A DNA stretch of 64,000 nt, taken from contig CM074517.1 of the NCBI GenBank assembly GCA_037379345.1, positions 34,906,001 through 34,970,000 of the forward strand, written 5' to 3'. Below the pieces are notes generated by a model, which saw only the letters and a program-made list of their open reading frames with translations, searched no databases and had not been told where the DNA came from. This DNA is from Perna viridis. Lineage: Eukaryota. The position numbers and the translations under genes are program-made. Of the stretch, positions 4,380-24,477 are shown in pieces; position 1 is the stretch's first letter, and the number at the start of each line of letters is the position of its first letter.

Positions 4380-4642
4380 AATTAAGTTAAGACCGTAAAT
4401 GCATGGAAAAGGAACCTACATAAATTACGCATCACCTTGAAATTTCCAGTGATTTTGAAATATATGCATGTACTATAGTTTGAAAGAGGGTGGGCTTCTA
4501 AAATAATAAGGCTAGACATACTGGCGTCACAACTCGATACAAAATGAAATTCATCCTCGACACGTTTCATAGTGCATAAAGCACACTATTTGACATCTCT
4601 ATACCATAGTAACGCCCAGTTTCAACAAACAAGGAATGTGAT
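4380..4642 (-). mobile_element. RTE-X/L2-like LINE 3' remnant split by the BEL insertion (continues at ~13087-13250)
   Basis: Removing the BEL element and one TSD restores the minus-strand reading CKLR*SSHSLFVETGRYYG...CALCTMKRVEDEFHFV..C, the C-terminal Cys/His motif of LINE ORF2. Confidence 0.75.
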
Positions 4643-5451
4643 TGTAAAAGTTAACTGTTTTCCGGAATTTTAATCCGGTACGATTCCGTATTTAGAATAG
4701 ACACGTTGAAATATCTTACGCCATTTGCAATTTTGACGAAACTAATTTACGTTTTAGAGTTTATAAGCCCAAAGAGGTATGTAATCGTAATATTATTAGT
4801 GTAAATAATGTTTTCATATCATTGTTTCAATCGTGAGTACATTTTTATTTGAATTTTATTGATTTTGAACAACTATTTTTAGAACTACAACATTGACGAT
4901 TGTTTACACAGACATTTTCTTTTAAATTGGCGTATTTTGATCGTATGCATCCATATCTCATTATTTTGCGTAGATTTATAATTAATCAGCTTAATTCTAT
5001 GATATTTCAAGTTGAAAAGTTCTTTGTCAAGTTTGATTTTTACGATTTTGTTGATAAGTAAATAAACGTGAGGCTCCAAGTAATTATTTTATTGATTTTT
5101 AGAAATACTTTATGACCGAATTTATCGTAATTTTTCATGGTAAATTGTGTGTTATTTTATATTGTTTTGATGCTTCATGAACATGGTTTTGTACTCACAC
5201 AATTTTATTGTATTTTTGACAGTTTTGACGTAGACGTTTATATGCAGTATCAAAGAGATTTCATTCATGGATTATTGTTGAAGTGTTGCGTAATATTGCG
5301 TTTCTGATTGCGAATAGATAAATGTTATATATTGCGAAATCCATATATAATATTATTGAAATCACATCACGTCTGACAATAAATATTTTCAGTACAAACT
5401 TTTGGGTTTCAATTAACAACTCCTCGCGGTGGTTCGATCACTGCCGTGATA
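4643..5451 (+). repeat. BEL/Pao 5' LTR (TGT...GATA)
   Basis: Direct repeat of 12280-13086 with roughly a dozen differences counted by eye. Confidence 0.95.
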
Positions 5452-5600: not shown

Positions 5601-6296
5601 ATGAGTGAAAACAAATTGCGAAAGTGCATACGGAAGGGCACAACAGATGTGAAAGCTGACTTATCATTTACTCCAGTGTTTGTTACCGACAGTAAAGGTA
5701 AATACTTGAGATGTTGTGCGACTGACGATAGAATAAAGTTTTATTATAAAAGTTCTGTAAATTCTGAAGATATCAAGAAGTGGTTTAAGAACATTCCGAA
5801 ACTAGTGTCGAAATATTCTAGAGTGAGAATATATTTATGGATTGGTACATGCGACTTGACAGTTAAATCTGGAAGATACATTGTTTTGAACAAGGATTCA
5901 TCTGTAAAAACATTCAAGGATAATTTACTATTTTTGAAGGACACATATGCATCAGAAAGTGTAAAAATTACATTTATTCATGTACCATATTATTCAATAA
6001 GGATCTGGAATAAGACGAAAGGACATAAATCACCAGAACAGTACACGAGTGATGATGAGACATTAAATTCACGAATAGATAATATAAATAACTACATAGA
6101 CGATTTGAATTCAGAGTTAAGTTCATATAGTCCGAAGATAAACGGAGACCTTCTGCGAAGTCGAAAACGTGCGAATTCCGTGCAAAGATACTCACAGAAC
6201 TTTAAACTGTTGCCTGATGGTATACACCCTGGTACAATTCTTGCGAAAGCCTGGTTTGTTACTCTAGTGAAAATTATAAACAGAGACTGTGTGTAG
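5601..6296 (+). CDS. SGNH/GDSL hydrolase (esterase-like) accessory ORF upstream of BEL gag
   Basis: Intact 231-aa ORF with block I FVTDSKG (Ser nucleophile), block III WIGTCD (GxND-like) and block V DGIHP (Asp/His). Confidence 0.85.
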   Translation: MSENKLRKCIRKGTTDVKADLSFTPVFVTDSKGKYLRCCATDDRIKFYYKSSVNSEDIKKWFKNIPKLVSKYSRVRIYLWIGTCDLTVKSGRYIVLNKDSSVKTFKDNLLFLKDTYASESVKITFIHVPYYSIRIWNKTKGHKSPEQYTSDDETLNSRIDNINNYIDDLNSELSSYSPKINGDLLRSRKRANSVQRYSQNFKLLPDGIHPGTILAKAWFVTLVKIINRDCV

Positions 6297-6620
6297 AGTG
6301 TAGGCAGGGGAAGCTCAGTCACACTCAGGTTTGTTTACATTATTATAATATTTCACTGTAGTTTCATGTTAAGACATATGCTGATTATAATATAAGGGTA
6401 ACACATGGAATTAATTTAGGTCAAGGTCAGGTTACATTTAACATGCATGTACATGTTGGTCATGATAGGCTAAGTGTCTATTATTAGTATTTAATACATA
6501 TATGTTATTAGTACATATATGACTCTGGTTTATTTTATGATATAGGCTAAAAATTGAGTGAACACTGTGTGTAGGCTGGGATTGCTCAGTCACACACAAG
6601 ATAAAGGTACATGTTTAGCC

Positions 6621-8100
6621 ATGTCACATGCTAATGAGACTGCTCAGGGTGCACAAGGTGTAGATAATAAGGTTAAAGATGAAAAACCCTCAAGAGACAT
6701 TAAGTATACAGAAAAGGGTCTAGAATATCAGATTGCTCAGAAATGTAAAACTGTCAGACAATTTATTTCTCAGTGGCATACTGAAGCAGAAAAGCTAAAT
6801 GTTGTTCTATCAGACTCTTCTGAAAGTAGTGTAATAACGAATGCACGAGACCATCTATTGAAAGTCATGAATGATCTACGAATAGAATGTAGCGTATTGA
6901 AATCATTGTTAGGAGAGAGCACAGAAGATGTCCCTAAGTATGATGACATTGAGAATGAACACCATAGACTCATATCTAGCGTTGCGGATGTACTATTAGA
7001 TCTGAAGAGTGACGTTGAAGTATTCTCAAAGGCACGTTCTAAAGTAAGCGTAAGATCTCGTTACTCATCTAAAAGGTCAGTAGGGTCAGATCATTCTGAG
7101 AAACAACAATTAACAGCAAAGAAGGAAGCACTGAAAATTGAGCTGAAATATATGGACAGGGAGTCTAAGGCGAAATTGGAATATGATCGAATTAAGGCTA
7201 TGAAAAAGTTGGACATCACTGAAGCTACATTGGAAGTTCATGACAGAGATGAAGATGACGAGTTAAATAGTAGGCTGGATTTACCTGTAGCATCAAAGGA
7301 CGAGAAAGTAAGCAAATATGTAAACTCATACGATCACAAAAAACCAACCAGAAACGACATTGATGATCAAGAACATGACATGACTCATCTTAAAAGTACT
7401 CCCTCTACTGGTATGCAAAATTTAATGGAGGCTGATGTCACAATGCCACAAACTTCTAAGGTCAGAATCGCGTCTCAAGAAAGTCATGGTGTGTCTAAGT
7501 CTAAGCCAACAAATACTACAGTCAGTTTTAGACCTCTACCAAATACACAGAACACGCTTAACCCAGATGCGAATGCGTTCACACCAGTCTCACATAATGA
7601 TATATCAGGGTCGGCTACCCGTGGAACAATGGCACCTACATTGGGTATGAATCAGACCACAGTAGATAATGGACTATCTGCGATTATGAAAACTTTGATG
7701 GACCATGTAAGTCTTGGCAGACTACCATCTCCGGAACCTCCTGTCTTCAGTGGCGATCCTCTGTTATATCCTGGATGGAAGGCAGCATTTAGTACGCTAA
7801 TAGAGCAACGACACATACCGAAAGCCGAGCAAATTCATTATTTGAAGAAATATCTCGCTGGACCAGCGAAGGAAGCTGTAGAGAACTACTTTCTACTTTC
7901 TAGTGATGCTGCTTATGATGAAGCCAAAATTCTATTAGACGAGCGGTTTGGGGATCCATTTGTGATCGGTAATGCATTTAGAGTTACAAGTTGGAAAAAT
8001 GGCCCAAGATTGCATCTCGAGACAGTAAAGCGCTCCAGAAGTTTGCAGATTTCTAGAAATGTTCAAAGCTGCACCCAACTGCATTCCATGGTGATGTAGA
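6621..8100 (+). pseudogene. BEL/Pao gag (coiled-coil plus DUF1759-like region), frameshifted and 3'-deleted
   Basis: PEPPVFSGDPLLYPGWKAAFSTLIE...HYLKKYLAGPAKEAVE...LDERFGDP. Frame is lost near 7985 and no zinc knuckles are seen. Confidence 0.85.
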
Positions 8101-8224
8101 TCATTCAAAGGTACAATCAAAGGACTCAAATAATCCCTTTACTTGTGAAACAAAGTCAATAGTTCAGGCGTCACATACGAGCATATCATTTCTTAGTAGT
8201 AGCAAAGCTCTTAGCAAGAACAGT

Positions 8225-11200
8225 ATGGTACTACCAGTGTACTTGTCACATAGCGATAATCCAGACAATGAAAGGTTGGTGTATGCTATGTTAGACACAC
8301 AATCTGATACTTGTTTCATCCTAGAGGATACCTGCAGATCTCTCGGTTTGGCTGGAACAGGTGTCACACTTAAGCTTTCTACAATGCTAGCAGAGAATAA
8401 AACCGTTAGAAGTGCTCGTTTTAAGGGACTACTGGTGCGAGGACACGACAGTACATAGAATAGCTCTACCAGATACCTTTTCTAGAAGTATTATTCCGGC
8501 TAACAAAAGCCACATACCCACTCCGGAAATGCGAGATCATGGTCTCATCTTAGTACCATAGCTGATAAATTAATGCCCATGGCAAACTGTGAAATAGACC
8601 TGCATATAGGTTACAACGGTCAAGGTACTACAACCGGTCGAAGTTTCTAGGATGTTCGAGTTGGACTTTAGTGAGAATACGGCATGCAATGATTCAAATA
8701 GTATGTCACAGGAAGACAAGAGATTCATTCAGGTTGTAAGTGACGGAATTGAGTTCGACGATAGTAGTGGACATTACAGTTTACCACTACCGTTTAAAGG
8801 AGAACCTCCTCATCTTCCTAATAATAGATTTGTGGCGATGCGGAGACTTACAAATCTCACCAAGCGATTCAAGGCGGGTAAACGATATTATGAGCTCTAT
8901 AAGGAATTCATGGAAAATCTTATTAAGAGAGGTCATGCCGAGATTGTTTCTCAGTCAGAAATGTCCCAAGATGAAGGCTTTGAATGGTATATTCCGCATC
9001 ATGGAGTGTTTCATCCACGGAAACCGGATAAGTTGAGAGTTGTATTCCACCGCAGTTCTAAGTTTAAAGACAAAAGTTTAAATGACCACCTACTGCAAGG
9101 TCCCGATCTAACAAACACCCTCATTGGAGTCTTATGTCGTTTTCGACAGGGAAAGATCGCATTTACATGTGACATTGAACAAATGTTTCACCAGTTCTAT
9201 GTTCACAAGAACCATCGCAATTATCTTCGTTTCCTTTGGTGGAAAGATGCCAACATGACGGAAGTTGCGGTTTATAGAATGTGCGGCCACCTGTTTGGAG
9301 CAACTTCTTCTCCTCGCTGTGCCAATTTTGGACTAAAACAAATCGCAGCAGATAATGAAGTTGAATTTGGATCTAATGTCTCAAATTTCCTTAGAAAAGA
9401 TTTTTACGTAGACGATGGGTTAAAGTAAGTAGCGTCTGTCAAAGAGGCCGTCCAGATGATAAAGGGTAGTCAAAATATATGTTCAAAGGGCGGAGTACGA
9501 CTTCACAAGTTAAGCAGCAATTCAAAAGAAGTTTTGAGTTCTATACCAGTCGAAGATCGAGCTGTCGGATTGAAAGACATAGATATTTTCAATCATCAAC
9601 TACCGATTGAAACAACACTTGGTGTTCAGTGGAACATTGAATCTGACGCATTTCAATTCAGAATTACATTGAGTGACAAGCCACTGACCCGTAGAGGAAT
9701 CTTGTCGGCAATAAGCTCTGTATATGATCCTTTGGGTTTCATATCACCAGTGGTATTGGTAGGAAAACAAATCTTACAACAAACATGCGGATATGATGTT
9801 GATTGGGACGACCCGATTCCCGAAAATTTGCATATGCGATGGAAACGGTGGAGAAGTGATTTGAATGAGTTAGCGAACCTACAAATCAAGCGATGTGTAA
9901 TTCCAGATGATTTCACTGATGTCAAAATTATGGAATTTCATCATTTTTCAGATGCAAGTTTGGTTGGATATGGTCAGTGTTCATATCTAAGATCTATAGA
10001 TGCTTCCGGACGAATTTATTGTTCGTTGCTAATGGGAAAGGCTAGAGTCGCACCTAGAAAAGCGATGACAATACCACGTTTAGAACTGACAGCAGCAGTA
10101 ATTTCAGTTAAGGTTCACGCTGTATTGAAACGGGAATTTGAGTTTGAGAACGTTTTGCACTTCTTCTGGACAGATAGCTCAGTTGTATTAGGCTACATTA
10201 TGAATGACGCTAAACGCTTTCATGTTTTCGTAGGTAATAGAGTTCAGCTTATCAGAGATCAAACCAATCCTTGTCAGTGGAAATATGTACAATCTAAGGA
10301 AAATCCTGCTGAAATAGCATCCAGAGGAGCAACAGCTTCAGAATTGATCAGCTCGAATTGGATAACAGGACCAACTTTCCTGTGGAATAAGGAATTACCG
10401 ACATCTCATGCAGTCACTGACTTGGAAGACATGAAAGACGATCCCGAGGTGAAGAAAGTTCAGTCATTTACGACTTGTACGGAAAATACGACTTCTTCGA
10501 TGTTAGATAGACTAGCTTATTTTTCTAGATGGGACAGAGCCAAACGTGCCATTGCTAATTGTATTCGTTTGAAGCGTCTGTTAAGGAAACGTCTGGACAA
10601 AGAAAACGAAACGACAAAGGAATGTGTTGAGCATAACTCTCAGACTGTTGAAGATCTACAGAGAGCTCAGGTTGAAATTTTGCGAATAGTTCAAGCTGTT
10701 CATTTTGAAAAGGACATTGATAAACTTAAACGGAATGTTGAAATCAGCAAAGATTCGAATCTTCATCGGTTGGATCCTATATTGGATGAAAATGGACTCA
10801 TCCGAGTAGGAGGTCGAACACGTCAATCGCTCGATGCATATGAAGTAAAACATCCGATCATTCTACCAAGGAAGGATCATGTTACTGACTTGCTGGTCAA
10901 ACACTACCATGAAAGAGTACAGCACCAAGGTCGAGGAATAACGACGAATGAATTGCGAAGTAATGGCTTCTGGATTTTAGGGTGTAGTTCAGCAGTAACA
11001 AACGTTATTTACCATTGTTACACATGCAGGAAGCTTCGTGGAAGGTCACAAGGTCAGAAAATGGCGGATCTTCCAAGTGATAGAGTTGAACCCGCACCAC
11101 CCTTTTCATACTGTGGCGTTGACTGCTTTGGACCGTTTCTAGTAAAAGAAAGGAGAAAGGAACTAAAAAGATATGGAGTGATTTTCACTTGCTTTACCAG

Positions 11201-12073
11201 TAGAGCCATTCATTTGGAAATTGCCAACTCCTTGGATACGGACTCATAAACGCTCTTCGTCGATTCTTATGTCTTCGAGGACCCATTCGTCATCTTAGGT
11301 CGGATAGAGGGACTAATTTTATCGGCGCTAAGAATGAGTTGGATCGCGCAGTGTCAGAAATGGACGACGAACGAGTAGCGGAATTTCTCAAAAATGAAGG
11401 ATGCGACTATTTCAATTTGAAAACTAATGTACCCTATGCAAGTCATATGGGAGGTGTCTGGGAGATGCAAATTAGGACTGTTAGAAGTATATTGGCAACG
11501 TTGCTGTCAAAATTAAGTCAACAACTTGATGATGAATCATTACGGACTTTCATTTGCGAAGTTACCGCAATCGTTAATTCACGTCCTCTCTCCATAGAAA
11601 ATGTGAACGATCCTCATTCACCTGTACTTACTCCCAATCACCTGCTGACAATGAAATCCAAGATCATTTTGCCACCTCCAGGAAAATTCATAAGACCAGA
11701 CTTGTATGTAAAGCGGAGATGGAGACGTATTCAGTATCTAGCGAATGAGTTTTGGTTAAGGTGGCGCAGAGAATATCTAAGTAACCTCCAAACTAGAGAC
11801 AAGTGGACCAAAACCCGTAGGAATTTCAAAGTTGATGACGTCGTCATGGTTATAGATGATAACCTGCCAAGAAATGTTTGGAAAATTGGCCGAATGTTTG
11901 AGGCTAATATTGACAATGATGGTTTAGTTAGGAAAGTTAGACTTTCGATTGGATCTTCTGATTTGGATTCTAAAGGTGTTAGAAGAACAAGCTTGATGGG
12001 ATTAGATAGACCTATTCATAAACTGGTTCTGTTACATGAGACCGAGGAAATCCCCGCCGATGAGCCTCAGTAA
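8225..12073 (+). pseudogene. BEL/Pao pol (protease, RT, RNase H/Pao domain, integrase) with stops and frameshifts
   Basis: VYAMLDTQSD (protease); YIPHHGV..KLRVVF, DIEQMF, FYVDDG (RT); HHFSDAS, TIPRLELTAA, FWTDS (RNase H); HHCC and DDE integrase motifs. Stop at 9426-9428, frameshift near 11247. Confidence 0.93.
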
Positions 12074-12279
12074 TATATGTATGTGTGTGCATTGACGCTT
12101 GTTTATTGATAAACTGTATTTTATCTGAACATGTAGTAAATATTTTGAAAATACTATTTGACATGAAATTTTGATGACGGTATTGGTCGCAATATTTTTA
12201 TACTAGTGCATTATTGTGTTAATACTTTTTCGATATTTTGAAATTTTGAAAATTGAAGAATTTCAATTTTGGGGAGCCA

Positions 12280-13086
12280 TGTAAATGTTAACTGTTTTCC
12301 GGAATTTTAATCCGGTACGATTCCGTATTTAGAATAGACACGTTGAAATATCTTACGCCATTTGCAATTTTGACGAAACTAATTTACGTTTTAGAGTTTA
12401 TAAGCCCAAAGAGGTATGTAATCGTAATATTATTAATGTAAATAATGTTTTCATATCATTGTTTCAATCGTGAGTACATTTTTATTTGAATGTTATTGAT
12501 TTTGAACAACTATTTTTAGAACGACAACATTGACGATTGTTTACACATACATTTTCTTTTAAATTGGCGTATTTTGATCGTATGCATCCATATCTCATTA
12601 TTTTGCGTAGATTTATAATTAATCAGCTTAATTCTATGATATTTCAAGTTAAAAAGTTCTTTGTCAAGTTTGATTTTTACGATTTTGTTGATAGGTAAAT
12701 AAACGTGAGGCTCCAAGTAATTATTTTATTGATTTTTAGAAATACTTTATAACCGAATTTATCGTAATTTTTCATGGTAAATTGTGTGTTATTTCATATT
12801 GTTTTGATGCTTCATGAACATGGTTTTGTACTCACACAATTTTATTGTATTTTTTACAGTTTTGACGTAGATGTTTATATGCAGTATCAGAGATTTCATT
12901 CATGGATTATTGTTGAAGTGTTGCGTAATATTGCGTTTCTGATTGCGAATAGATAAATGTTATATATTGCGAAATCCATATATAATATTATTGAAATCAC
13001 ATCACGTCTGACAATAAATATTTTCAGTACAAACTTTTGGGTTTCAATTAACAACTCCTCGCGGTGGTTCGATCACTGCCGTGATA
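12280..13086 (+). repeat. BEL/Pao 3' LTR
   Basis: Direct repeat of 4643-5451, preceded by the PPT at 12271-12279. Confidence 0.95.
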
Positions 13087-13254
13087 GTGATGATTATCTT
13101 AGTTTACATCTAGTAAGGCATTTTTTGTAACAAGTCCGTTTTGTTAAATATTTTTGCAGACTTGGTACAAATTCAACAACAAATTTGTACAAATAACTCT
13201 TAGGAGAGCCCTGAAAGGTTCCGTTTAGATCAAATGTTAAGTACCAGTCAACAT

Positions 13255-13413
13255 AAAATTCAGACACTGTTAATGGAGAAGTGATTCGTGTTGGATAAAA
13301 AGTAATTCACGGTGAAGAAAAACCTACCAAACAAAAATTCAGACACTGCTAATGGGGAAGTGATTCGTGTTGGATAAAAATTAATTCACGGTGAAGAAAA
13401 ACCTACCAAACAA
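13255..13413. repeat. Two-copy tandem duplication (~79 bp)
   Basis: aaaattcagacactg...cctaccaaacaaa occurs twice. Confidence 0.9.
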
Positions 13414-14267
13414 ACGATGCTTCTGTGCAAATTTCATTAACAATCTACATTTTTGTACATACTTTTTCTTTATTTAGCGCAATAAACAAATAAAAAACTA
13501 AGACTGGTTATGTGATCAGTAACTGTTTCTAAACAAGAAATAAAATTAAATTGGGTTGGTTTTTGACGTGCTGTCTGATTTTTAGAAAGCCTGATAAAAA
13601 ATGTACTTACGATTAAAATACTAGGAGTGTGAAATGTGGTGCACGATAGAACGTTTCCATGTGTTGTTACCTCAAATTTGGTCCGTGGTCAAATCATAAC
13701 TTGTCATATTACACCATAATTCGTTTCTTTCCCCTGTATTTCCAAACTCATTGAGAAACTCTTCGCATATGAGAATAAGCACGCGAGAATAAGAACTTTC
13801 ACTGCTTTCAAAATCTTGGATGCAATTAAATGTTTTAAATTCGTTCTTCCCAAAATAGAGACAGGTTAGTATCATTCATTCCCGAGTGTTCGATATTGTC
13901 GTTTACCAAACGGAAATAAACGCGAGTTGAAGGATCACTCAGTCATAATCATTTTACTGCTACAAGTGGGGTTGCATGTACTGGACAACAAGAGCAAGTC
14001 TCACTTCCAGATAATGTTTACTAAAACCGTGTAAACATGATGGCTTTTCAAAGGGTATGGTCTGGATTAGACCCCCTTTTTTGTTGGATTTTTTTTCAAT
14101 ATTTTGCCATTTTTTGGGCAAATGTGGCAAAGTCCAACTTTCTAGTTTGCATATTTTAAGCAATGATTTTTATTTATATGCTGCAATGGTAATTCTTCTA
14201 CAAGTGATGGAATAAATATCAAGTGAAAAATGTGACTAAAACAGTATAAGCAATGACCATTATACAT

Positions 14268-14638
14268 AATAATACATTTTGTATATGTTCCATAAGTTTA
14301 TCTGTGCACGCAGTAAGACAAACTAGATAGAGGTAGGTACTTTCTCACATAAGATACAGTACAAATGTTTTTTTTTTGTTAAAATGTAGATATGGATAGT
14401 TATGGGTACAAATGTAACTTGTTTATGTTGTTAATCTTCTGTATTTTTGAATGCTGGAATAATACATTTTGTATATGTTCCATAAGTTTGTCTGTGCACG
14501 CAGTAAGACAAACTAGATAGAGGTAGGTACTTTCTCACATAAGATACAGTACAAATGTTTTTTTTTTGTTGTTAAAATGTAGATATGGATAGTTATGGGT
14601 ACAAATGTAACTTGTTTATGTTGTTAATCTTCTGTATT
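14268..14638. repeat. Two-copy tandem duplication (~190 bp)
   Basis: aataatacattttgtatatgttcc...ttctgtatt occurs at ~14268 and ~14458. Confidence 0.9.
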
Positions 14639-14985
14639 AACAATTCAGAAAGGCTTTAAATTTGAAATTAACAATATAGATATGATCATTTGAAACCATA
14701 ATAGATTCAGTGCTTCTAGACCCAAATGTAGTACAGAGTTTTGATTTTAGCATTTTAAATATAAAAATACTAGTTTAGTTTTTCAACCTGTCCATCACAC
14801 ACTGAAGATTGGATGCAAGTTTTCATTAGTGGGAATTGGGGTGTAAGATTGTTTGTGTTTGAAGAGAAATTGTGTTACGATTTGGAAATTGTATATATAT
14901 GGCATATAAGTTGTACTGATTTCATTTTTTCTTCTCATTTTTAAGCTCTTCTCTTTGCACCACTAACATACCTTGTGTTTCAAAG

Positions 14986-15144
14986 GTAATCAAGGGAACC
15001 AATGTAATAGCGGCAATCAAAGGAATGTAATTCAGGGACAAAGACCAGACATGGAAAACAGACATACACAACAAAGAACATAAAGTAACTTAAATCATAC
15101 ACACAAAGTAACAAAAGCAAATGAGCAACTCAGACTACACTAAA
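14986..15144 (-). mobile_element. Penelope-like repeat 3' end (copy 2)
   Basis: Reverse complement of the 3' part of 2567-2949. Confidence 0.7.
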
Positions 15145-17622
15145 CTTGTTACATTTTTTTAAAGTTCAACGACAGCTTTCTCCACAATCTCTTAATTAAT
15201 TTTGATTAAACTTACCCCCAGCATGTTTGACTTAACATTGAATGTTAAATGTGCATTACAAGATAACTGCTTTAAGGATGCTTGCAATGAAAATTAATTC
15301 AACTAAATTGAAAGGTACCATATGTATTATCATGCAGAATTGTATTTCACCATTTCAGGGACCAGCCACCTGCTTGCCTCTATGGTGAATGACTAATTCA
15401 GTATATGCAAACTTGATAGCTAATCATATCACGTATACACTGTTCTCCAGAATTTTTGTACTCCTGCTTTTTGAGACGGGACATATTATGGCATACTGGT
15501 GTCCGCCCATCTGTTCTTCATACTTAGCACAATAAATCAAAAGTGCTGCCACCAACTTATATAGAAAGCACTTTATCTGCGTGTCTGTCTGTCTGTTCAT
15601 GTTATCTTTTAGATGTCTGATTGCAAGTAATTTCAGCTGTTGATATTAGAAATGAATATATATCAAGTAAGAAAAAATAAGATCACTTTAATTACAAATA
15701 AAATGGTATTGTAAAATATTTTATATATTTTGTTTGCATAAAGATTTTTACTTGTTTTATTCTACAGAGATGAGAAAGGAAGCATGTTTCATGGGTTAGG
15801 CTGACCAAGAAGAAAAAGAAGTGCCAAAAAGCTGATTATGGACCTGAATTTAGACTTTCATTAGAATTTTTATAATTTATTTAAATATTAAGATAAAAGT
15901 ACTGCTCATACAGCATTCTAAGTTTATATTCTTATACAGCATATTTATAGTCAGAGTGTCTTTGAATATTTTTTTCTATTTAGTTGTTTTACATTTGTGG
16001 TTGATAAGTGAATTTTCAAAGTGATTTCATTTCAAAGCTATAAAAGATTAAAAACTTCAAAAAACATCCCAAAACAATTAAAAAAAAGCTCTCTCTTTTA
16101 GTCATTCAGCTTTTTTATTCATACTGCACAGAAGAAAAATGCACTAAGTGAATATGTAAGGCATACACTCTCTATGACTATCATTATATTTTAACCCAAG
16201 ATATCCCATGGGAGAATTTAAAATCCCATGAATTTCAAATTGTAACTACAAATTTATTTTAGTAAATATTGTAAAACAAAATGCATTTTATTAAATCCCA
16301 TGCAAATCTGCATCCAATGGTTACTCACATGACATGGTAGGTTGAAGAAAAAGCGGCGGAAGATTTGCAATTTAGTGTTTTGCAAATTTAAATTGTCTCG
16401 TGTTTCTTGTGAGTTTCTTGGTAAATTGATCAGTGGAAATGGGGTCAGTGTCTCTCCAGGTAAACTTGATTGTGTCTGCCAATGGCCAATCCCAGAGAAC
16501 AAAAAAGAACTGCAGAGTTTTCTGGGTTATACGAATTATTACCGAAAGCATATACAGGGGTATGCAGGGATGACGGCCGTTTTGTACGAATTGTCAGGTT
16601 CTAAGTCTGAATTTAGTTGGGGTCCCGAACATGAAAATGCCTTCACTAATCTGAAGAAAGCTATTACCACCCCACCGTGTTTAGCATTTCCAGAGTCGGA
16701 CGGACTATTTATTTTGGACACAGATGCGTCTCATAACGCTAAAGATGCTGAATTATCACAGATCCAGTCTGGAAAAGAAAGGGTCATTTCGTATGCAAGC
16801 AACACATTGATTTCAGAACAAAAAAGATACTGTACTACTCGTAAAGAATTGCTTGCGGTAGTGAAGTTCTGCCGACATTTCAAACATTTCTTATTAGGCC
16901 GGAAATTCTTATTACGGACAGATCATCATAGTCTAGTATGACAATATAGTCATAGTCTGAAGGACAACTTGCTCGTTGGCTGGAGGAATTGTCGTTATAC
17001 GACATGGAAATTGTTCATCAAGCTGGGGCTAAGTATTCGAACGCAGATGGGTTATCCAGAATTCCGGACCGTTCAGATTGTGATTGTTACCATGCTGGAG
17101 CAAGACTTGAAGACTTGCAGTGTGGAGACTGTAAATTCTACACCAAAAAGCATGAGCAATGGGCAAGGTTTATTTTTGGAAGTTGATGAAGTGGTTCCAC
17201 TAGCTCGGAAAATCGACTAGGAGGAAGCTAATAGAGCCTCAACTTACCAAGCGCAAAAAGTCAGCATTGATCCAACTGAGAGCAACGAATCGATTATCAA
17301 TTTGGTTGACGGGTACTCTAATGAAGAATTAAGCAAATATCAACATGAAGACCCCGATATATTACCTTTAATAAGATGGTTAAAATCCGGAGATCCGGAC
17401 GAGTCGGAAATTCGCTTGAGTAGTCCAGCGACGAAGTACTTGTGGCAATGTCGGTCACAGCTGATATACGATGACAAAGTACTTAACTATGTATTGATTT
17501 TGTCAAACTTATTAAATTGTCTGAAGCCTCAAAGTGTACATGAATTTTGCAGTTATGAATGTCCAATGACAATAAGTGGAATATCTGTAGTTGTACCAGA
17601 ACTTAACGTGCCAACAGTAAGT

Positions 17623-18403
17623 ATCATTGACACCCATTTCCACTTAGATGTCTTACTTAAAAGATCGCATGCTGGATCTCTTATTGACATAGAGGAAGAT
17701 ATACCACAATTTCTTGTTTTACAGACAGGCGTTGCAAACTATGTCTTACCCCACCATTGGGACTCGTATATCAGGTCGATAATGACTCAAGGATATCCGT
17801 CACATTTGGGATACATTCTCGCGTGATTTTGGAGGCTAATACAAAAGCTATAAATAAACTGAAGTGCCTTTGAAACATTGTGTCGGTCTTAGTGAAATCG
17901 GCATCGACCTGACTGGGGATGCCAGGGCTGATCTTTCACTAAAAGATCGTCAGATAGATTTTATCCGAAGGGTGCTTCCAATAGCCAGAGATTTGGACCA
18001 GCCGGTTGTACTTCATTGTCGAGATAATGGTAACGGTGAGGCTTCTCGCATTGCATATGACTTATTGCCCGAATTTCTGGATGATGACCACCGCATACAT
18101 TATCATTGTTTCAATGGAACTCTGGACGAGGCTAAGAAATTGCAATGTAAATACAGTAATGTCTACTTTGGGATATCCAGTTTGGTCCTGAAAGAGCCCA
18201 ATTTATTTGATGTTGTGGCCAAGATAGATCACGGGAAATTATTACTTGAATCCGACGCCCCATATTTATCACCGGAGAAGCATATCCGTGTGAACACGCC
18301 ATATTGCTTATCGGTAGTGATTGAAAAGGTTAGTCATATCAAGAATTTACCCGTTTCGATCCTCGCAACTTACATGAACGAAAATGCAAGGCGATTAATG
18401 TAG
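17623..18403 (+). pseudogene. TatD-family nuclease domain inside the Gypsy element (frameshifted around 17770-17860)
   Basis: IIDTHFHLD, FGIHS (alternate frame), VGLSEIGIDL, PVVLHCR, HYHCFNG, LLLESDAPYL, NTP, NARRL: the complete TatD motif series. Confidence 0.88.
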
Positions 18404-18823
18404 TGTTACCAGGAAGGTTTCTGCTTTCTTACAGTAATTCGTAATGACATGAAAATAGTTGAGGAAGGCTAATGCTTTCTTCTCTTTGTTAAAATACTGG
18501 TATAAAACCCGTTAAATTATTATATTGTTTTTATTTTTATTACTTGTTCCGTGCTTCAATACGTATAAGCCACATTTGTATTTGATTTTTTATGATAAGT
18601 CTTAACAGGAGACCCTTACTGTGTTATTTTTGTATATATAATGACTGCATCTAAAAGCGGTTTTATCGGAACTCGTGTTCCATTCATGTGGGAACTTGGA
18701 AATGAACGTTTCAATGGACATTTTATTGACTTTAAATTGTGTTTATTTTCAGTTTATGTATGTGTTTATGATGATGGGCTTTGATTTCAAGTGTATAATT
18801 ATCTTTTATAAGATTGGGGGGGA

Positions 18824-19053
18824 TGTTACAGTATGGTGTTAATGTGTACCGTATGGTGCTCCCATTATAGGAGGAATATATTTGCTGCTATTATATAACA
18901 CCGAATTGTGTGGTCTCTTCCGGTTAATAAAGATAAGAAAAGTCTGCTGTATTTCTAAGCTCCAAGACTTTGTGTCTATAACTCAGACTGTGTGTCTGCC
19001 CCCTAATTTCTATGTGATTTAGGGATATTTTTACGCCACCTAGTTCGGTAACA
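18824..19053 (+). repeat. 3' LTR of the TatD-bearing Gypsy
   Basis: 6-bp terminal inverted repeat TGTTAC/GTAACA, upstream PPT, internal AATAAA. The matching 5' LTR is not in the window. Confidence 0.8.
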
Positions 19054-19232
19054 CTACCTTAAATCAACGCTCCTAGCGTGCGTTCAAACGAACGAATAAC
19101 GATGTGTGAACGCACGATAAATGATGCACGAGAGATAAAAATTGGAAACGTGAACGTTTCAAGGAGTGTATATGTACAAATGTTGTAAATACAACTTCCA
19201 TGTCAATAGAAGACAAGCAGCTTAAAATGTAT

Positions 19233-19459
19233 TATTATACACATGAGTTGAAATAGATTTCTCTTCAATTTATTATTTTCCGGAAACGGCATTTTTCCGT
19301 CATCCGTTTAGTTAAATTTTTTTGGAGTTGTTTTTGTGTCGTCTGTTGCAAGTATATGTGTATATGTGTTTTTTTCATTTTTGGGGATTTGACAATTGAA
19401 TAATATAAACATATACCATTATTATATACCTCTCGTTCCCCAAACAACAGATGGTAAAA
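19233..19459 (+). repeat. Gypsy 5' LTR
   Basis: Diverged direct repeat of 34207-34427. Confidence 0.88.
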
Positions 19460-19530
19460 TGGTGGAGAATTCAAAGACGGTAACATGATTGAGAATTCAA
19501 AGACGGTAAAATGATGGAGAATTCAAAGAA
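19453..19530 (+). promoter_or_regulatory. Triplicated LTR-end/primer binding site (3 x 26 bp; tRNA-Ala-like PBS)
   Basis: ggtaaaatggtggagaattcaaagac / ggtaacatgattgagaattcaaagac / ggtaaaatgatggagaattcaaagaa. Confidence 0.75.
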
Positions 19531-19598
19531 GATGTGAATATCAGCTAGGTAAATTTGAACTTTGTTTGTAATTTTGTGCCAGTTCTCGAACTTTCTGA

Positions 19599-20337
19599 AT
19601 GAGCTTATCCATAGTGAACAAAAGGATTCGGGACCTTTCCAAACGTCTTGACAATGGCAATTCGAGAAAAATTCCAGTATTATTAACAGACAGTAGAGGT
19701 TGAAATTTAGAGAACGTTACAGATCCTAACTAGATATCCAGAAAACAAGTTGTGTTTTTGGTATTCGCCTGGCGATGGGGTTGAAAAACAGTTTTCATGG
19801 TTACAGGAAAATTTACAACAGAAATTTCAGGACATTGGTTCTCAACAGTTAACTTTATATATATGATTGGGAGCGTGTGACTAACGAAAAAAGTTGATCG
19901 TTACATTGAACTTAAGTCAGAAACTAATTCAACAGTGAGTAAAATTTACGAGACATATAAAGAAATTCACTGATATATTGGACAATTTCCCTCTATCAAT
20001 ATTGTGTTTTTAGAACTACCATTTTACTCTATCTACCTCTGTTATGTTCATCATCGCCACCCCAAACCACAACAGTTTCGTGTTCAAGACCAGAAATTAC
20101 ATAAACAAATCATTGAAGTGAATAAATTTATTAACCAAATTAACATTTTGCACCATCAGAATTCGCCTTCTTTCTCACGACTTAGAAAGTAGCCGTAAAC
20201 GAGCAGGTCAAGTTAGACCTAGATACAGTTTTAATTGTGGATTGTACGTTGATGGAGTCCACCCAAATCCTTCATTGGCGAAACTTTGGCTGATACGTAT
20301 AGCACTTCGGCTACCAAGAGACTGTGGAATCATATAG
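19599..20337 (+). pseudogene. SGNH/GDSL hydrolase pseudogene upstream of Gypsy gag, homologous to 5601-6296
   Basis: Manual translation across stops and frameshifts gives IPVLLTDSRG...LYI*LGACD..KKVDRYIEL...VFLELPFYSI...SRKRA...RYS...DGVHPNPSLAKLWL...RDC. Confidence 0.88.
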
Positions 20338-20522: not shown

Positions 20523-21703
20523 ATGGCTGATGTAGAATCCGATTTAAGTGATGCTAGTTCAAGTCTGTTCAACTCTTCTGTTCTCTCTGACAGATTTTTG
20601 GTAGAAAACGAATTTCATATTGATAAATTAAGTTCGTTCAATAGCCGTTTCTGACATTGAAGAGCTGTCCGATAGCACAAATACTTCTAACGTCTCTGAC
20701 AGTCCTCTGCTACCTCCAGTTCTCACCCTACAAACAGATCATAAAACTATACACCCGAAAGCAAAATCAGCTCCAAGTACAACAATCATAGAAAAACTAG
20801 CTGTGTGTAGAAAATTTGGGGGTTACCCGCATGAAAATGGTTCAATTTTTCTGAATGAATTTGATTCATATGCAACATTACACAACATACACGCTGGGGA
20901 CCATCGGCGTATAATTGCAGCGTTTCATTTGCACCTTACGGGGCCAGCTGTGACATGGTTTAATTCTCTCGACAAAAGTCACAAAGAAACCTGGGAAATT
21001 TTTTAGAGTCACTTCAAAAATGGATATGTCAATTTGAGTTGGAATCTCAAATTATCCTCATCTCAGTCATTGGAAGACTATCACTGCAAGCTTGTCGAAA
21101 AAGCACAACTTTTGTCAAAACCAGATCATGAAATATTATGTAAATTTGTGAAGGGTCTACCAGAAAAAACTTCTTTGTAAGGGCCAGTAACCACAGTTCT
21201 AGTGCAAGCGTACTCTCCGCAGCAAAAATGGGAGAGGCGAGTGGATACAGAATCCACACGGAGTTAAGTGTAGCTTCGGCTAATCCACAAAATACAACTG
21301 GGCAAAGTACACCTAAACAAACATATGACACGAAATCTGAAGTTACAGAGTTGAAAGAACAGGTGACAAATTTAACGAACATGGTACACAAATTCACGGT
21401 ACAAACTGAACCTTCCCAACGGAGACCAGCAAATAATTACAAACCGAGCGAAATACCGAACATGCTCGGGAACAACGCACACCAATGCGTAAAAATGAAC
21501 AAAAAGAAATATTCACTTGCAGTAAATGTGCCGGTGTCTGTCACATACAACTAAATTGCCTATGGAATAGCAAAGGAGAGCCAAATACTGATGTTAGGTG
21601 CCAAATGTGCAACCAATACGGCCATTCCGCATTTCAATGTCAAAAGTTTAACTCCACCACCCCGAGGGACACAGGGCACGCTCCTCCGGGCGGTCAATCT
21701 TAA
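20523..21703 (+). pseudogene. Gypsy gag with two zinc knuckles
   Basis: KFGGYPHENG..FLNEF..HLTGPAVTWF (capsid-like); CSKCAGVCHIQLNC and CQMCNQYGHSAFQC; multiple frameshifts. Confidence 0.85.
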
Positions 21704-21834
21704 GTGCCAGAAAGCGATCTCCTTCTCTGAGCCGACCAAGATATCATTTAACTGCAAATTCTTTAAAAGTTCAAGATGTTAGTGATTTATTTTCAGATTA
21801 TACTGATTCGGATAAAGAGGTAAAGTCCAAATTC

Positions 21835-24260
21835 TTGTACATGCCTGTAAAAGTACACGGTTTAAATATAACTGCGTTGGTTGATACTGGAAGCTCAATG
21901 AATGTTATATCTCGACAGTTTTATGACTCCATAAATTTTAATTGTAAAAGTCCAATTACAAATGTTTATGAAAGGATAACATTAGCTAACAATCAATCAA
22001 TTGACATTATGGGCACAACTAGCATCAAAGTTTCTGTGCCGAGAGGCAAACACTGGATAAGTGTCTATGTTCTCACACAAACTTCACATCCGCTAATCAT
22101 CGGTACCAGTTATTTAACTAAGCATACTATTGTTCTAGATTTTAGCAAATTTAGAATGTATTGCAAGGAGGCTAAAGTAAAAAGCCGGAGAAGAGTCACC
22201 ATTCCGCCGAACTCAGAATTAGTTGAATTCGGAAAATTAAACAATAATATTTTGTATGGTAATCAGGGCATATGTTCAAGTAGTGAATATCTAAACAAAA
22301 GGGGAATAATTGTTGCAAATACTGTAGTTATAGTCAGTAACAGAAATCTAGTCCCCGTCAGATTATTTAATGTTACAAATGAAAGTATAATGATTCCGAA
22401 AGGAAAATTGTTGTCAACATTTGAGATTTTAGATCAAATAATTGTTCAAAATATGCAATTATCGGAGCAATCTGGCGACGAGCAAGTGGACTCAAAGTTT
22501 TTGTCATATTTTGAAATGCCTGAAAATTTGAGTGATAAAGAGGAAGCTTAGTTGCAAGAATGCTTAAAATCTCACAAAAATTTGTTTGTGACCGACGAAA
22601 ACCCAGATCTAGGTTATTAGTGCATCATAGAATAACTTTAAAACCGGATTATCGCCCGAAGTACCAGAGACCATACCGTTTACCTCCCGATAAAAAAGAG
22701 GCCCTACGCGAGCACCTTGATGAACTATTACGTCAGAACATTATTGCACCAGTGAATGAATCCGAGAGAGTACCAATAACAAGCCCTGTTGTACTAGTAT
22801 CTAAGCGTACTAAACCAAAGAAAGCTTCCAATGAACGACATAAGAGTCCATTGCAGTATAGATTTTGCTGCGATTTTCGTTATTTGAATAGCCAAGTACA
22901 AGATTTTTGCTACTCGATTCCAGACCTGCAGGACCTCTTTTTCCAACTAATCACCGAATTTTCTAACCTCTATTGATATGTCTTCAGGATTCTTTCAGCA
23001 ACCGATTCATTCAGATAGTCAACGGTTTACCGCTATCAACACATGCTATGGTACTCTCAAATTTCTCAGATTACCGATGAGCCTGAAATCATCACCATCG
23101 TCTTTCCAACTTCTGATGGACAAAGTATTACATGGCCTCACTTTTAAAATTTATTTGTGTTACTTAGATGACATACTAATTGCATCGGAAGCTTTTGAAC
23201 AACATTTGGATGACTTGAGTAATGGGTTTTCTCGCTTAGAGGAAGCTGGTTTGAAGTTGGGACCAAGAAAATGTACTTTAGCACGAGATTCATGTATTTT
23301 TTCAGGCCACCTTACTTCAAAGAATGGCATTCAGCCACCTCCTGATCATATAACAACAATTCAAGAAATACCCTTTCTAAATCTGTACGTGAACTGAGAC
23401 GTGTAGTTGGTCTCTTTAACTGGTTTAAAAAGTATATTGATAATTTTAGTGTGACAATTGAACCACTGACTAGACTTTTACGGAAGAATATGCACTTCCG
23501 TTGGACTTTAGAACAAGAAACCGCTTTTATTGCTATGAAATCACTGCTCGTTTCATCGCCTATTTTAGCATTTCCGGATTATATCGTTCCGTTTCACCTA
23601 GGGGTTGACACGTCTGCAAAAGTAATAGGTTATGTACTTTTTCAATACCAAAAGGATGAAGATGACATTGAATTACGCAGAGTTATTACAGAATGTGACC
23701 ATCAAGCGTTGAAACCATTGTTCGGAAAACAGTTAAAAGGTGCTATTTGTGAAAGTTGGATAGCCATTATACAACAGTACAGTTTTGAAATAAGATACAA
23801 GCCAGCAAAGGAAATGCAGGTGGCCGACGCTCTGTCACGTAACACAAACCTGAAACAGTGCAGGATGAATTTTCTAGTCCAGACATTGAGGATCCATACT
23901 TTCCTTATCAAAAGGACATTGTTGGTGATATTATTGTGAAAAATGAAAATAAATTTCCTGTTACTTTACATTCTGACTCTAGTGATACAGAGCAGGTAAA
24001 TAACTTTTGTGTAGTGAAACCATCTTTATTGAAGCCACCTTCACTCACCAAAACCGACTTGAACCCTGACTCGATGTACGACGCAGATACGGAATGTGAC
24101 AATATACTAGATTTGAAAAAGTCTAAACTTTGTCGAAGTCAAAAAAATTAAATTACAAGTAGACCATTCTCACATTGAATCTAGTGCTTTTGAAGAAAGT
24201 AACAATCACTGTGACAAAATTGACAATTCAAGTAATGATGACACGACAAAAACCTATACT
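21835..24260 (+). pseudogene. Gypsy pol, 5' part (protease, RT, partly deleted RNase H, linker)
   Basis: ALVDTGSS; YQRPYRLP, YRFCCDFRYLN, CYLDDILI; GVDTS, ECDHQAL, VADALSR. Confidence 0.9.
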
Positions 24261-24477
24261 AGAAAGAGTTACAGTCCTTGATCTGCTAAGGTGTATTGAG
24301 GTTAGCTCCGACAAAAAATGATTTATTACAAATTCAATTGAGTGTTGTTTATCCAGATTTGCTCTGGAAGTTCCTAAGACATTAACGTTTACATGTAAAT
24401 GCATTTTGATACATTAGAAGGCAGTATTCTGATTGTAAAATAACTTTTTTCGTTGAACGAAACAACAATAACAAACA

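What the first reader, a model, noticed from the sequence alone, without database searches (positions are those of the whole stretch)
5601..20337. The same SGNH-hydrolase accessory gene sits upstream of gag in both a BEL/Pao and a Gypsy retrotransposon
Seen: the BEL ORF at 5601-6296 and the Gypsy pseudo-ORF at 19599-20337 align collinearly over their whole length. Matching blocks are TPVFVTDSKG/IPVLLTDSRG; IYLWIGTCDLTVKSGRYIVL/LYI*LGACD-TKKVDRYIEL; FIHVPYYSI/FLELPFYSI; DLLRSRKRA/DLESSRKRA; DGIHPGTILAKAW..RDC/DGVHPNPSLAKLW..RDC. Both lie between the 5' LTR/PBS and gag as separate ORFs. Known: SGNH esterase domains occur in ORF1 of some CR1/L2/RTE non-LTR elements but are not part of canonical BEL or Gypsy architecture. 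Inference: this is a mobile accessory module exchanged between, or repeatedly captured by, different LTR superfamilies. It may act on lipids or membranes during particle assembly or release, or on host acylated substrates. The GTCD/GACD variant of GxND suggests a distinct subfamily.
Basis: partly seen in the sequence, partly recalled or inferred. Interest (0 to 1): 0.92.

Follow-up and report, generated by a model that had tools for sequence, protein, structure and literature searches.

The report
Esterase gene shared by mussel retrotransposons
Two unrelated types of retrovirus-like jumping genes in this mussel-like genome carry, just ahead of their capsid gene, versions of the same small esterase-like gene; that gene belongs to a large unnamed family also found ahead of LINE-type elements, which extends a known but poorly understood link between such enzymes and mobile DNA.

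Summary
ORF 5601-6296 (231 aa, intact) is the first cistron of a BEL/Pao element at 4643-13086. That element has a 5-bp target-site duplication, GTGAT, and the insertion is polymorphic. A decayed homolog at 19599-20325 occupies the same slot in an old Gypsy element (19233-34427).

An AlphaFold model (pLDDT 93) matches only SGNH/GDSL hydrolases (Z 16-19). The Ser31/Asp206/His209 triad is conserved, but the oxyanion-hole Asn is replaced by a near-invariant Cys (motif GTCD).

The family is large and unnamed, with 566 clusters at 50% identity, and almost all members are about 240 aa. Of 13 contexts outside the window, 11 place it immediately 5' of BEL/Pao gag-pol, Gypsy-type gag-pol or LINE ORF1-ORF2. 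It is under purifying selection (dN/dS 0.08).

Its tree clusters by element class with the minimum number of switches. That fits a few ancient module transfers, not frequent exchange or repeated capture.

SGNH genes in rotifer Vesta LTR elements, Athena, Ngaro, CR1/L2 ORF1 and fish Helitrons are already published. This is therefore a new variant: a new position (5' "ORF0"), a new host superfamily (BEL/Pao) and a new sequence family. Catalysis, substrate and role are inferred only, and no RNA evidence for expression was obtained. Earlier notes of this scan report SGNH ORFs in other Gypsy elements of this genome.

The parts
4638..4642 (+). 5' target-site duplication GTGAT of the BEL/Pao insertion
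   Evidence: The same pentamer occurs at 13087-13091. RNA reads from two runs of the same species label pass from 4642 straight into 13092 onwards, which is the empty site.
4643..5451 (+). BEL/Pao 5' LTR
   Evidence: 98.4% identical to the repeat at 12280-13088 over 811 nt. Ends were fixed from the TSD and the empty-site reads.
5601..6296 (+). ORF0: intact 231-aa divergent SGNH-fold esterase-like gene. Motifs are DSKG at 30-33, GTCD at 82-85 and DGIHP at 206-210; block II has Ser52 where the family has Gly.
   Evidence: ORF and translation. AF2 model with pLDDT 93.3. Foldseek and VIA hits are SGNH hydrolases or design scaffolds that align alongside them, Z 16-19. Family conservation. dN/dS 0.08.
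6558..8099 (+). BEL/Pao gag (DUF1759). The first ATG is at about 6621.
   Evidence: Pfam PF03564, E 6e-9. Seven in-frame stops lie between ORF0 and this ORF.
8652..12073 (+). BEL/Pao pol, split in this copy into three ORFs (8652-9428, 9456-11249, 11339-12073)
   Evidence: Pfam hits: RVT_1 (weak), Peptidase_A17 at 3.5e-46, Integrase_H2C2 and DUF5641 at 1.8e-25.
12280..13086 (+). BEL/Pao 3' LTR, followed by TSD GTGAT at 13087-13091
19233..19459 (+). Gypsy 5' LTR. TSD GTAT lies at 19229-19232, and a TGG-starting primer-binding-like site follows from 19460.
   Evidence: 86.5% identical to 34207-34427. Flanks read directly.
19599..20325 (+). Decayed SGNH ORF0 of the Gypsy element, with at least 3 frameshifts and at least 6 stops
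   Evidence: tblastn with ORF 5601-6293 gives E 1e-15. The intact Gypsy-type ORF of L041 gives E 4e-39 and 1.5e-35, with frame changes near 19729, 19870 and 20169.
20758..21718 (+). Gypsy gag (decayed)
   Evidence: tblastn with Gypsy gag of L053 and L042, E 7.5e-56 and 1.9e-36.
21835..24013 (+). Gypsy protease, RT and start of RNase H
   Evidence: Pfam hits: gag-asp_proteas, RVT_1, RT_RNaseH_2. tblastn with L043 pol.
24453..30909 (+). Coding part of a LINE nested inside the Gypsy pol (zf-CCHC ORF1, RT, zf-RVT). It is not part of the finding but explains the 15-kb length.
   Evidence: Pfam. Gypsy homology stops at 24013 and resumes at 31630.
31513..33217 (+). Gypsy integrase
   Evidence: Pfam hits Integrase_H2C2 and rve. 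tblastn E 1e-132.
34207..34427 (+). Gypsy 3' LTR, preceded by a GGGGGA polypurine tract and followed by TSD GTAT at 34428-34431

Best explanation
ORF 5601-6296 is a retrotransposon accessory gene, not a host gene. It encodes a soluble, basic protein of about 230 aa with an SGNH-hydrolase fold. The protein keeps the Ser-Asp-His catalytic triad but has Cys where the oxyanion-hole Asn normally sits.

The ORF is the 5'-most cistron ("ORF0") of the element RNA, between the 5' LTR and leader and gag. The same protein family fills the same slot in BEL/Pao elements, in several Ty3/Gypsy lineages and, ahead of ORF1, in APE-type LINEs of bivalves and other marine invertebrates.

Shown here: the fold, conservation of the motifs, physical linkage inside LTR pairs, purifying selection, recent mobility of carriers, and clustering of the esterase tree by element class.

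Inferred: the protein is an active acyl-esterase made from the full-length element RNA, and it helps the element's own replication cycle. By analogy with the esterase domain of ZfL2-1 ORF1p, the likeliest substrate is a lipid, membrane or other acylated one, acted on during particle or RNP assembly or trafficking. Also inferred: the module moved between element classes a few times long ago and has since been inherited with its carrier.
For: Fold: the AF2 model has pLDDT 93.3 and pTM 0.88. The top Foldseek PDB hits are GDSL/SGNH enzymes or design scaffolds that align alongside them, E about 2e-6. VIA-align gives Z 16-19 at rmsd 2.5-3.2 A over about 180 residues.

Motif placement: DS follows strand 1, G follows strand 2, GTCD follows strand 3, and DGIHP precedes the last helix.

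Conservation: across 148 diverse members, D30, S31, K32, G52, G82, T83, C84, D206, G207, H209 and P210 are at least 90% conserved. 23 of 148 members give weak Lipase_GDSL hits.

Family size: 566 clusters at 50% identity, nearly all 230-255 aa.

Context (each homolog lies upstream of the element named):
- BEL/Pao gag-pol: P0005, P0006, P0015 and own-genome L040.
- Gypsy gag-pol: P0169 from Mytilus edulis, P0183, P0191 and own-genome L041-L043.
- An LTR element with gag and protease only in view: P0098.
- LINE ORF1 plus APE-RT: P0019, P0029.

Carrier activity: 100%-identical LTR pairs enclose the ORF in L052, L054 and L039. The window's BEL insertion is polymorphic.

Selection: dN/dS is 0.08 against an 84%-identical homolog.

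Localisation: no TM segment or signal peptide, and pI 9-9.7.

Tree: BEL tips form one clan (94/94). The labelled tips need only the minimum number of class changes. SGNH and RT divergence run in parallel within Gypsy.
Against: No enzymatic data exist for any member.

The canonical oxyanion Asn is replaced by Cys throughout the family, and block II Gly is Ser in this particular lineage, so hydrolysis could be weak or altered.

Pfam gives no hit for the window ORF, and no sequence-level match to any solved SGNH enzyme is significant.

No RNA reads covered the element in the two RNA-seq runs sampled, so expression is unproven.

How gag would be translated downstream of a 5' cistron is unknown.

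Only 13 homologs outside the window had their genomic context read. More than 50 own-genome hits could not be fetched.
Confidence: 0.75

Rival explanations
1. The protein is a pseudo-esterase or non-hydrolytic factor. On this view it keeps the SGNH scaffold but works as a binding or chaperone protein (for RNA, gag or acidic lipids) or as an acyltransferase, not as a hydrolase.
For: The oxyanion Asn is replaced by Cys in at least 90% of members, and block II Gly is Ser in the window's lineage. The protein has pI 9-9.7 and a conserved basic hairpin, R186/R188/K189/R196. The published ZfL2-1 esterase has very low turnover (PMC3905857). The peptidoglycan O-acetyltransferases PatB and OatA are among the structural matches.
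Against: Ser31, Asp206 and His209 are conserved in at least 90% of 148 members, and strong purifying selection acts on the gene. A purely structural role would not need the triad.
Confidence: 0.15
2. Each element class captured a host SGNH gene independently. The BEL and Gypsy ORFs would then resemble each other only because they descend from related host genes, with no transfer between elements.
For: The tree is unrooted. BEL, Gypsy and LINE sequences form separate clans. Two contexts show no retroelement partner: P0167 lies beside DUF6589/PHD ORFs and P0021 beside PIF1 helicase fragments.
Against: All members share one compact architecture of about 240 aa, the unusual GTCD motif and the same N-terminal helix. 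No intron-bearing host paralog was seen. 11 of 13 contexts read are retroelements. The same 5' slot is used in all three classes.
Confidence: 0.07
3. The similarity or the position is fortuitous. On this view ORF 5601-6296 is an unrelated ORF or a host gene fragment trapped in the element.
For: None found.
Against: Similarity is at E 1e-15 to 4e-39. The ORF lies inside LTR pairs in several genomes. It is conserved in three near-identical BEL copies of this genome.
Confidence: 0.02

Closest known systems
GDSL esterase/lipase ORF3 of bdelloid rotifer Vesta LTR retrotransposons and Athena Penelope-like elements (Rodriguez, Kenefick and Arkhipova 2017, PMC5408684)
   Same: A stand-alone SGNH/GDSL accessory ORF carried by Gypsy-like LTR elements and shared with another retroelement class. 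It lacks TM and coiled-coil domains, and its function is unknown.
   Different: The rotifer ORF lies 3' of pol (ORF3), whereas here it lies 5' of gag. The rotifer ORFs are reported with intact canonical S-G-N residues, whereas here Asn is Cys. BEL/Pao carriers were not reported. Sequence relatedness to the rotifer ORFs was not tested, because no sequences were at hand.
Esterase (ES) domain of ORF1p in CR1, L2 and RTEX LINEs; structure of ZfL2-1 ORF1p esterase, PDB 4c1b (Kapitonov and Jurka 2003; Schneider et al. 2013, PMC3905857)
   Same: An SGNH fold with a Ser-Asp-His triad, encoded upstream of the RT gene of a retroelement. The published enzyme is active on pNP-acetate and associated with lipids, which gives the best functional analogy.
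   Different: The ES domain is fused to a coiled coil or PHD within ORF1p. Here the gene is a separate cistron of about 240 aa that precedes a distinct ORF1 in the LINE contexts. ZfL2-1 has the canonical Asn195. Family profiles did not detect 4c1b at E up to 10, and it is not among the 50 best structural matches.
SGNH hydrolase ORF of Ngaro (tyrosine-recombinase) retrotransposons (Goodwin and Poulter 2004, as cited in PMC9210276)
   Same: An extra SGNH ORF in a retroelement, with no proven function.
   Different: It lies after the recombinase gene, in a different element order and in vertebrates. The relationship to this family was not tested.
Texim SGNH genes associated with Helitrons in fish (PMC4021074)
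   Same: An SGNH hydrolase gene lying just upstream of a transposon's coding region. One family member here (P0021) lies 258 nt upstream of PIF1-like helicase fragments.
   Different: Texim genes have introns and are described as captured host genes. The Helitron nature of the P0021 locus is not established.

Membership tests
SGNH/GDSL hydrolase superfamily | Three-layer alpha/beta/alpha fold with a central parallel sheet, as in solved SGNH enzymes | tested here: met
   The AF2 model has pLDDT 93.3. The 50 best PDB matches are SGNH/GDSL enzymes or design scaffolds that align alongside them, Z 15-19 at rmsd 2.3-3.6 A over 150-183 residues.
SGNH/GDSL hydrolase superfamily | Block I nucleophile Ser (GDS-type) directly after strand 1 | tested here: met
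   D30-S31 follows strand 24-29. D30, S31 and K32 are at least 90% conserved in 148 members.
SGNH/GDSL hydrolase superfamily | Block II oxyanion-hole Gly | tested here: inconclusive
   G52 is at least 90% conserved in the family. It is Ser in the window ORF and its closest relatives P0001 and P0002.
SGNH/GDSL hydrolase superfamily | Block III GxND with the oxyanion-hole Asn | tested here: not met
   The motif is G82-T83-C84-D85, and Cys84 is at least 90% conserved. HMMER aligns GTCD to the GTND or GN-D of SGNH chains.
SGNH/GDSL hydrolase superfamily | Block V DxxH (catalytic Asp and His) before the C-terminal helix | tested here: met
   D206-G-I-H209-P210 is at least 90% conserved and precedes helix 212-229.
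SGNH/GDSL hydrolase superfamily | Match to Pfam Lipase_GDSL or Lipase_GDSL_2 at the curated threshold | tested here: not met
   The window ORF has no Pfam hit. 23 and 10 of 148 members give only weak hits, best E 3e-5 and 2e-4.
SGNH/GDSL hydrolase superfamily | Ester hydrolysis or acyl transfer that depends on the Ser | not testable with these tools
   Needs a biochemical assay.
LINE ORF1p esterase (ES) domain of CR1/L2/RTEX | Detectable sequence kinship with the ES domain (ZfL2-1, PDB 4c1b), and fusion to the coiled-coil or PHD part of ORF1p | tested here: not met
   Profiles A1 and A2 do not find 4c1b at E up to 10. The gene is a separate ORF of about 240 aa ahead of ORF1.
Rotifer Vesta/Athena GDSL ORF3 | Position 3' of pol | tested here: not met
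   The gene lies 5' of gag in the window and in every retroelement context read. Sequence kinship was not tested.
BEL/Pao LTR retrotransposon (carrier 1) | LTR pair with TSD; gag with DUF1759; pol with Pao peptidase A17, RT, integrase and DUF5641 | tested here: met
Ty3/Gypsy LTR retrotransposon (carrier 2) | LTR pair with TSD, PBS and PPT; gag, then PR-RT-RH-INT in that order | tested here: met
   The element is interrupted by a nested LINE between RH and INT.

The most novel reading that the evidence does not exclude
One ancient family of about 240-aa esterases with a Cys-substituted oxyanion hole may be a pan-retroelement "ORF0" gene of lophotrochozoans. On this reading it has passed between LINEs, BEL/Pao and Gypsy elements, possibly also Helitron-like elements, and in this genome possibly also the env slot. 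It would be required for their propagation and act on a defined acylated target, for example membrane lipid during particle or RNP trafficking or cell-to-cell spread. That would make it a fourth common retroelement gene class beside gag, pol and env in these animals.
Probability: 0.3. Interest if true: 0.75.

Novelty: new variant of a known kind. Interest (0 to 1): 0.6.

Why it matters
SGNH esterases keep turning up in mobile elements: CR1/L2 ORF1p, Ngaro, rotifer Vesta and Athena, and fish Helitrons. No biological role has been established for any of them.

This family adds a third LTR-type carrier, BEL/Pao, and a new gene position, the 5'-most cistron. It also shows that a single sequence family is shared by LINE, BEL/Pao and Gypsy elements.

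The family is large, compact, intact in recently active elements and strongly constrained. The natural protein models with high confidence and should be easy to express. That makes the open question directly testable: what does an esterase do for a retroelement?

The family is also unannotated. Mytilus entries read "uncharacterized protein", and one LINE-bearing contig is filed under a bacterial MAG. Naming it would improve transposon annotation in molluscs and annelids.

Tried and rejected
- Pfam on the window ORF gave no hit.
- Profile searches of PDB sequences with 22 and with 148 members gave nothing significant; the best E values were 0.2-0.5, partly on SGNH chains.
- The BFVD viral fold search gave only generic phage SGNH esterases and tail-spike domains. 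There was no special likeness to viral haemagglutinin-esterases.
- RNA evidence: two raw RNA-seq runs of the same species label gave no reads on the element, only on the flank and the empty site. The older contig runs gave only short LTR and ORF pieces from related copies. Expression, transcript starts and splicing therefore remain unknown.
These include a multi-copy intact 219-273-aa subfamily. Their element class and position, including the "env-slot" copies mentioned in earlier scan notes, were not checked.
- A readthrough or fusion of ORF0 with gag is rejected, because seven in-frame stops lie between them.
- A secreted or membrane-anchored env-like role is rejected as unlikely, because there is no signal peptide or TM segment in the family.
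- The direction of transfer (LINE to BEL or the reverse) could not be settled. The tree is unrooted and LINE monophyly is unresolved, at 44% of bootstrap trees.
- Literature searches for BEL/Pao plus esterase, and for bivalve retrotransposon esterase domains, found no prior report.
- No binding prediction was run, because no binding claim is made.
Full report
**1. The observation**

ORF 5601-6296 is intact and encodes 231 aa. A tblastn of this protein against the whole 64-kb window finds itself and nothing else significant except two collinear pieces. These lie at 19839-20168 (frame +3) and 20170-20325 (frame +1), with a joint E of 1e-15.

An intact relative from a Gypsy element elsewhere in the same genome (L041:1649-2395) aligns to 19599-20325 at E 4e-39 and 1.5e-35. 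That alignment shows how the window's Gypsy copy is broken. The homologous path changes frame near 19729, 19870 and 20169 and crosses at least six stop codons. I only describe the breaks and built no mended version.

**2. The two carriers**

*BEL/Pao element.*
- It has direct repeats at 4643-5453 and 12280-13088 that are 98.4% identical.
- Its gag carries DUF1759. Its pol carries Pao peptidase A17, an integrase zinc domain and DUF5641.
- In this copy pol is split into three ORFs.
- The pentamer GTGAT flanks both ends.
- RNA reads from two runs labelled as the same species pass from 4642 directly into the sequence that starts at 13092. That is the empty site carrying one GTGAT.
- The insertion is therefore polymorphic and recent, and the element spans 4643-13086.
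- ORF0 begins 150 nt after the 5' LTR. Seven in-frame stops separate it from gag, so it is a separate cistron.

*Gypsy element.*
- It has 227-nt LTRs at 19233-19459 and 34207-34427 that are 86.5% identical, with TSD GTAT.
- A TGG-starting primer-binding-like site follows the 5' LTR, and a GGGGGA tract precedes the 3' LTR.
- Gag homology lies at 20758-21718, PR-RT at 22102-23564 and RNase H at 23568-24013.
- A nested LINE follows (zf-CCHC ORF1, RT, zf-RVT), and integrase homology resumes at 31630-33217.
- The SGNH pseudo-ORF sits 140 nt after the 5' LTR.

**3. What the protein is**

Pfam finds nothing for the window ORF. An AlphaFold2 model built on 22 homologs is confident, with mean pLDDT 93.3 and pTM 0.88.

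The top Foldseek matches in the PDB are GDSL/SGNH enzymes, or design scaffolds that align alongside them, at E about 2e-6. VIA-align gives Z 16-19 at rmsd 2.5-3.2 A over about 180 of 231 residues. The enzyme matches are acylhydrolases, sialate O-acetylesterases, PAF acetylhydrolase, acetyl-xylan esterases, PatB and OatA.

The conserved motifs fall where the SGNH blocks belong in the predicted secondary structure:
- D30-S31 lies after strand 1.
- The block II Gly lies after strand 2.
- G82-T83-C84-D85 lies after strand 3.
- D206-G-I-H209-P lies before the last helix.

In a 148-member alignment, D30, S31, K32, G52, G82, T83, C84, D206, G207, H209 and P210 are each at least 90% conserved. HMMER's weak alignments to SGNH chains place GTCD on GTND or GN-D. 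The Cys therefore occupies the position of the oxyanion-hole Asn.

The window's own lineage has Ser instead of the block II Gly. 23 of 148 members give sub-threshold hits to Pfam Lipase_GDSL and 10 to Lipase_GDSL_2. The proteins have no TM segment or signal-like N-terminus and a pI of 9-9.7.

Overall this is a divergent SGNH-fold family that keeps the catalytic triad but has an altered oxyanion hole.

**4. The family and where it lives**

phmmer against 1.84 billion cluster representatives finds 566 clusters at E ≤ 1e-3 and 302 at E ≤ 1e-10. Nearly all are 230-255 aa and match end to end. Named members are only "uncharacterized protein" entries from Mytilus edulis, M. galloprovincialis and M. 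coruscus, plus one "hypothetical protein" filed under a Sedimenticola MAG. The protein atlas points to Mollusca and Annelida.

I read the genomic context of 13 homologs outside the window.

| Context immediately downstream | Homologs |
|---|---|
| BEL/Pao gag-pol | P0005, P0006, P0015, own-genome L040 |
| Gypsy gag-pol | P0169, P0183, P0191, own-genome L041, L042, L043 |
| Retrotransposon gag and protease (LTR element, class not resolved) | P0098 |
| A separate ORF1 followed by an APE endonuclease/RT ORF, i.e. a LINE | P0019, P0029 |
| PIF1-helicase fragments | P0021 |
| No retroelement partner; beside DUF6589/PHD ORFs | P0167 |

The P0169 Gypsy partner in M. edulis is an annotated 1734-aa gene model that starts 155 nt downstream. 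P0019 sits on the contig filed under a Sedimenticola MAG, which I take to be eukaryote contamination.

Perfectly identical LTR pairs enclose the ORF together with gag-pol in the M. edulis Gypsy (L052), in another Gypsy (L054) and in a BEL element (L039).

In the window's own genome a profile search finds at least 85 matches. Further copies followed by Gypsy protease or RT are L015, L019, L021 and L051. The rest could not be fetched.

**5. Selection**

Against an 84%-identical homolog (P0002), Nei-Gojobori counts give dN 0.091 and dS 1.11, so dN/dS is 0.08. Against the 97%-identical copy in the same genome there are 6 synonymous and 5 non-synonymous differences.

**6. Exchange or co-inheritance?**

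In a 157-row tree and in a more careful 59-row tree, the BEL-labelled tips form one clan with support 95* and 94/94. Four or five Gypsy tips form another clan with support 100* and 99/99*. P0191 (Gypsy) and P0098 (LTR) fall in other clans. The two LINE-labelled clans join the BEL clan in a group with support 95* and 99/97*. The labelled tips need only the minimum possible number of class changes.

Within Gypsy, RT identity to L043 falls in the order L052 at 79%, L053 at 67%, the window and L042 at about 60%, and L054 at 33%. SGNH identity falls in step, at 66%, 43%, about 35% and 33%. The gene therefore travels with its carrier.

One homologous module in LINE, BEL/Pao and Gypsy elements cannot plausibly come from their common ancestor, because most lineages of each class lack it. 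A few old transfers between classes are therefore the simplest account.

BEL sequences are slightly closer to LINE-borne ones (38-42% identity) than to Gypsy-borne ones (33-39%). However, the tree is unrooted and LINE monophyly is unresolved, so the direction of transfer is open. Frequent exchange or repeated capture is not supported.

**7. Mechanism**

Shown here: a conserved, selected, triad-bearing SGNH-fold protein is encoded as the first cistron of retroelements that have recently moved.

Inferred: it is translated from the full-length RNA and acts as an acyl-esterase for the element's benefit. The best analogy is the ZfL2-1 ORF1p esterase. That enzyme hydrolyses pNP-acetate slowly, depends on its Ser and His, and was linked to lipids and membranes (PMC3905857).

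The Cys at the oxyanion position, the basic hairpin (R186, R188, K189, R196) and the high pI leave room for an altered chemistry or a binding role. How gag is expressed behind ORF0 is unknown. Reinitiation, an internal entry site or a spliced RNA are all possible. No RNA reads covered the element in the runs sampled.

**8. What is known**

SGNH/GDSL genes have been published in these mobile elements:
- CR1/L2/RTEX ORF1p (Kapitonov and Jurka 2003; PMC3905857).
- Ngaro elements (PMC9210276).
- Bdelloid Vesta LTR elements, as ORF3, and Athena elements. The authors explicitly proposed gene sharing between retroelement types (PMC5408684).
- Fish Helitrons (PMC4021074).

Searches for BEL/Pao with esterase, or for bivalve retrotransposon esterase domains, found nothing.

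Earlier notes of this scan report Gypsy elements of this same genome with an SGNH ORF in the env position, and one with an ORF upstream of gag. I could not check them. The multi-copy intact 219-273-aa subfamily seen may be those.

**9. Verdict**

This is a new variant of a known kind. It has a new position, a new carrier superfamily, and a large unannotated sequence family with an unusual active-site motif that is shared across three retroelement classes.

Noticed in passing
window 4600-4642 joined to 13092 onwards: RNA reads of two runs (X13, X14) read through the empty integration site. The BEL/Pao insertion is therefore absent from those individuals or alleles, and the flanking DNA is transcribed at a low level.
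   Followed up: partly
window 17302-18403: TatD-type DNase ORFs (PF01026, E 1.7e-33) lie directly after a Gypsy RT/RNase H fragment at 16342-16941.
   Followed up: no
window 24453-30909: A LINE with zf-CCHC ORF1, RT and zf-RVT is nested inside the Gypsy pol between RNase H and integrase. It carries no SGNH ORF.
   Followed up: partly
window 5593-5604: A three-codon upstream ORF (ATG AAC AAA TGA) ends in a stop that overlaps the ATG of ORF0. Several other ATGs lie in the 150-nt leader. This may be chance.
   Followed up: no
window 4774-5221: One contig of run X2 (RNA only by guess) skips 446 nt inside the LTR, with GT..AG ends, and then continues into the 3' flank of this locus. It could be an LTR deletion variant or a spliced read-through.
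   Followed up: no
G000, e.g. C14:10263862-10264476, C3:58420426-58421040, C8:25865978-25866592, C13:36339210-36339935: Several multi-copy subfamilies of intact 219-273-aa open frames match the family profile more distantly (E 1e-13 to 1e-17). They may be the env-slot SGNH ORFs of Gypsy elements reported in earlier scan notes. The DNA could not be fetched.
   Followed up: no
L037 (NCBI GCA_040505955.1, JBEVXT010000464.1): A 6-kb contig filed under a Sedimenticola MAG carries the SGNH ORF, an ORF1 and an APE-RT ORF. It is a eukaryotic LINE, so probably host DNA binned into a bacterial MAG.
   Followed up: partly
L036:1379-5103: Family member P0021 lies 258 nt upstream of PIF1-like helicase fragments on the same strand. 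This recalls the texim-Helitron association in fish. No Rep domain was looked for.
   Followed up: partly
L055:7199-9711: The Mytilus coruscus member P0167 has no retroelement gene nearby. It follows ORFs with DUF6589 and a PHD finger, which suggests a different and unidentified carrier.
   Followed up: partly
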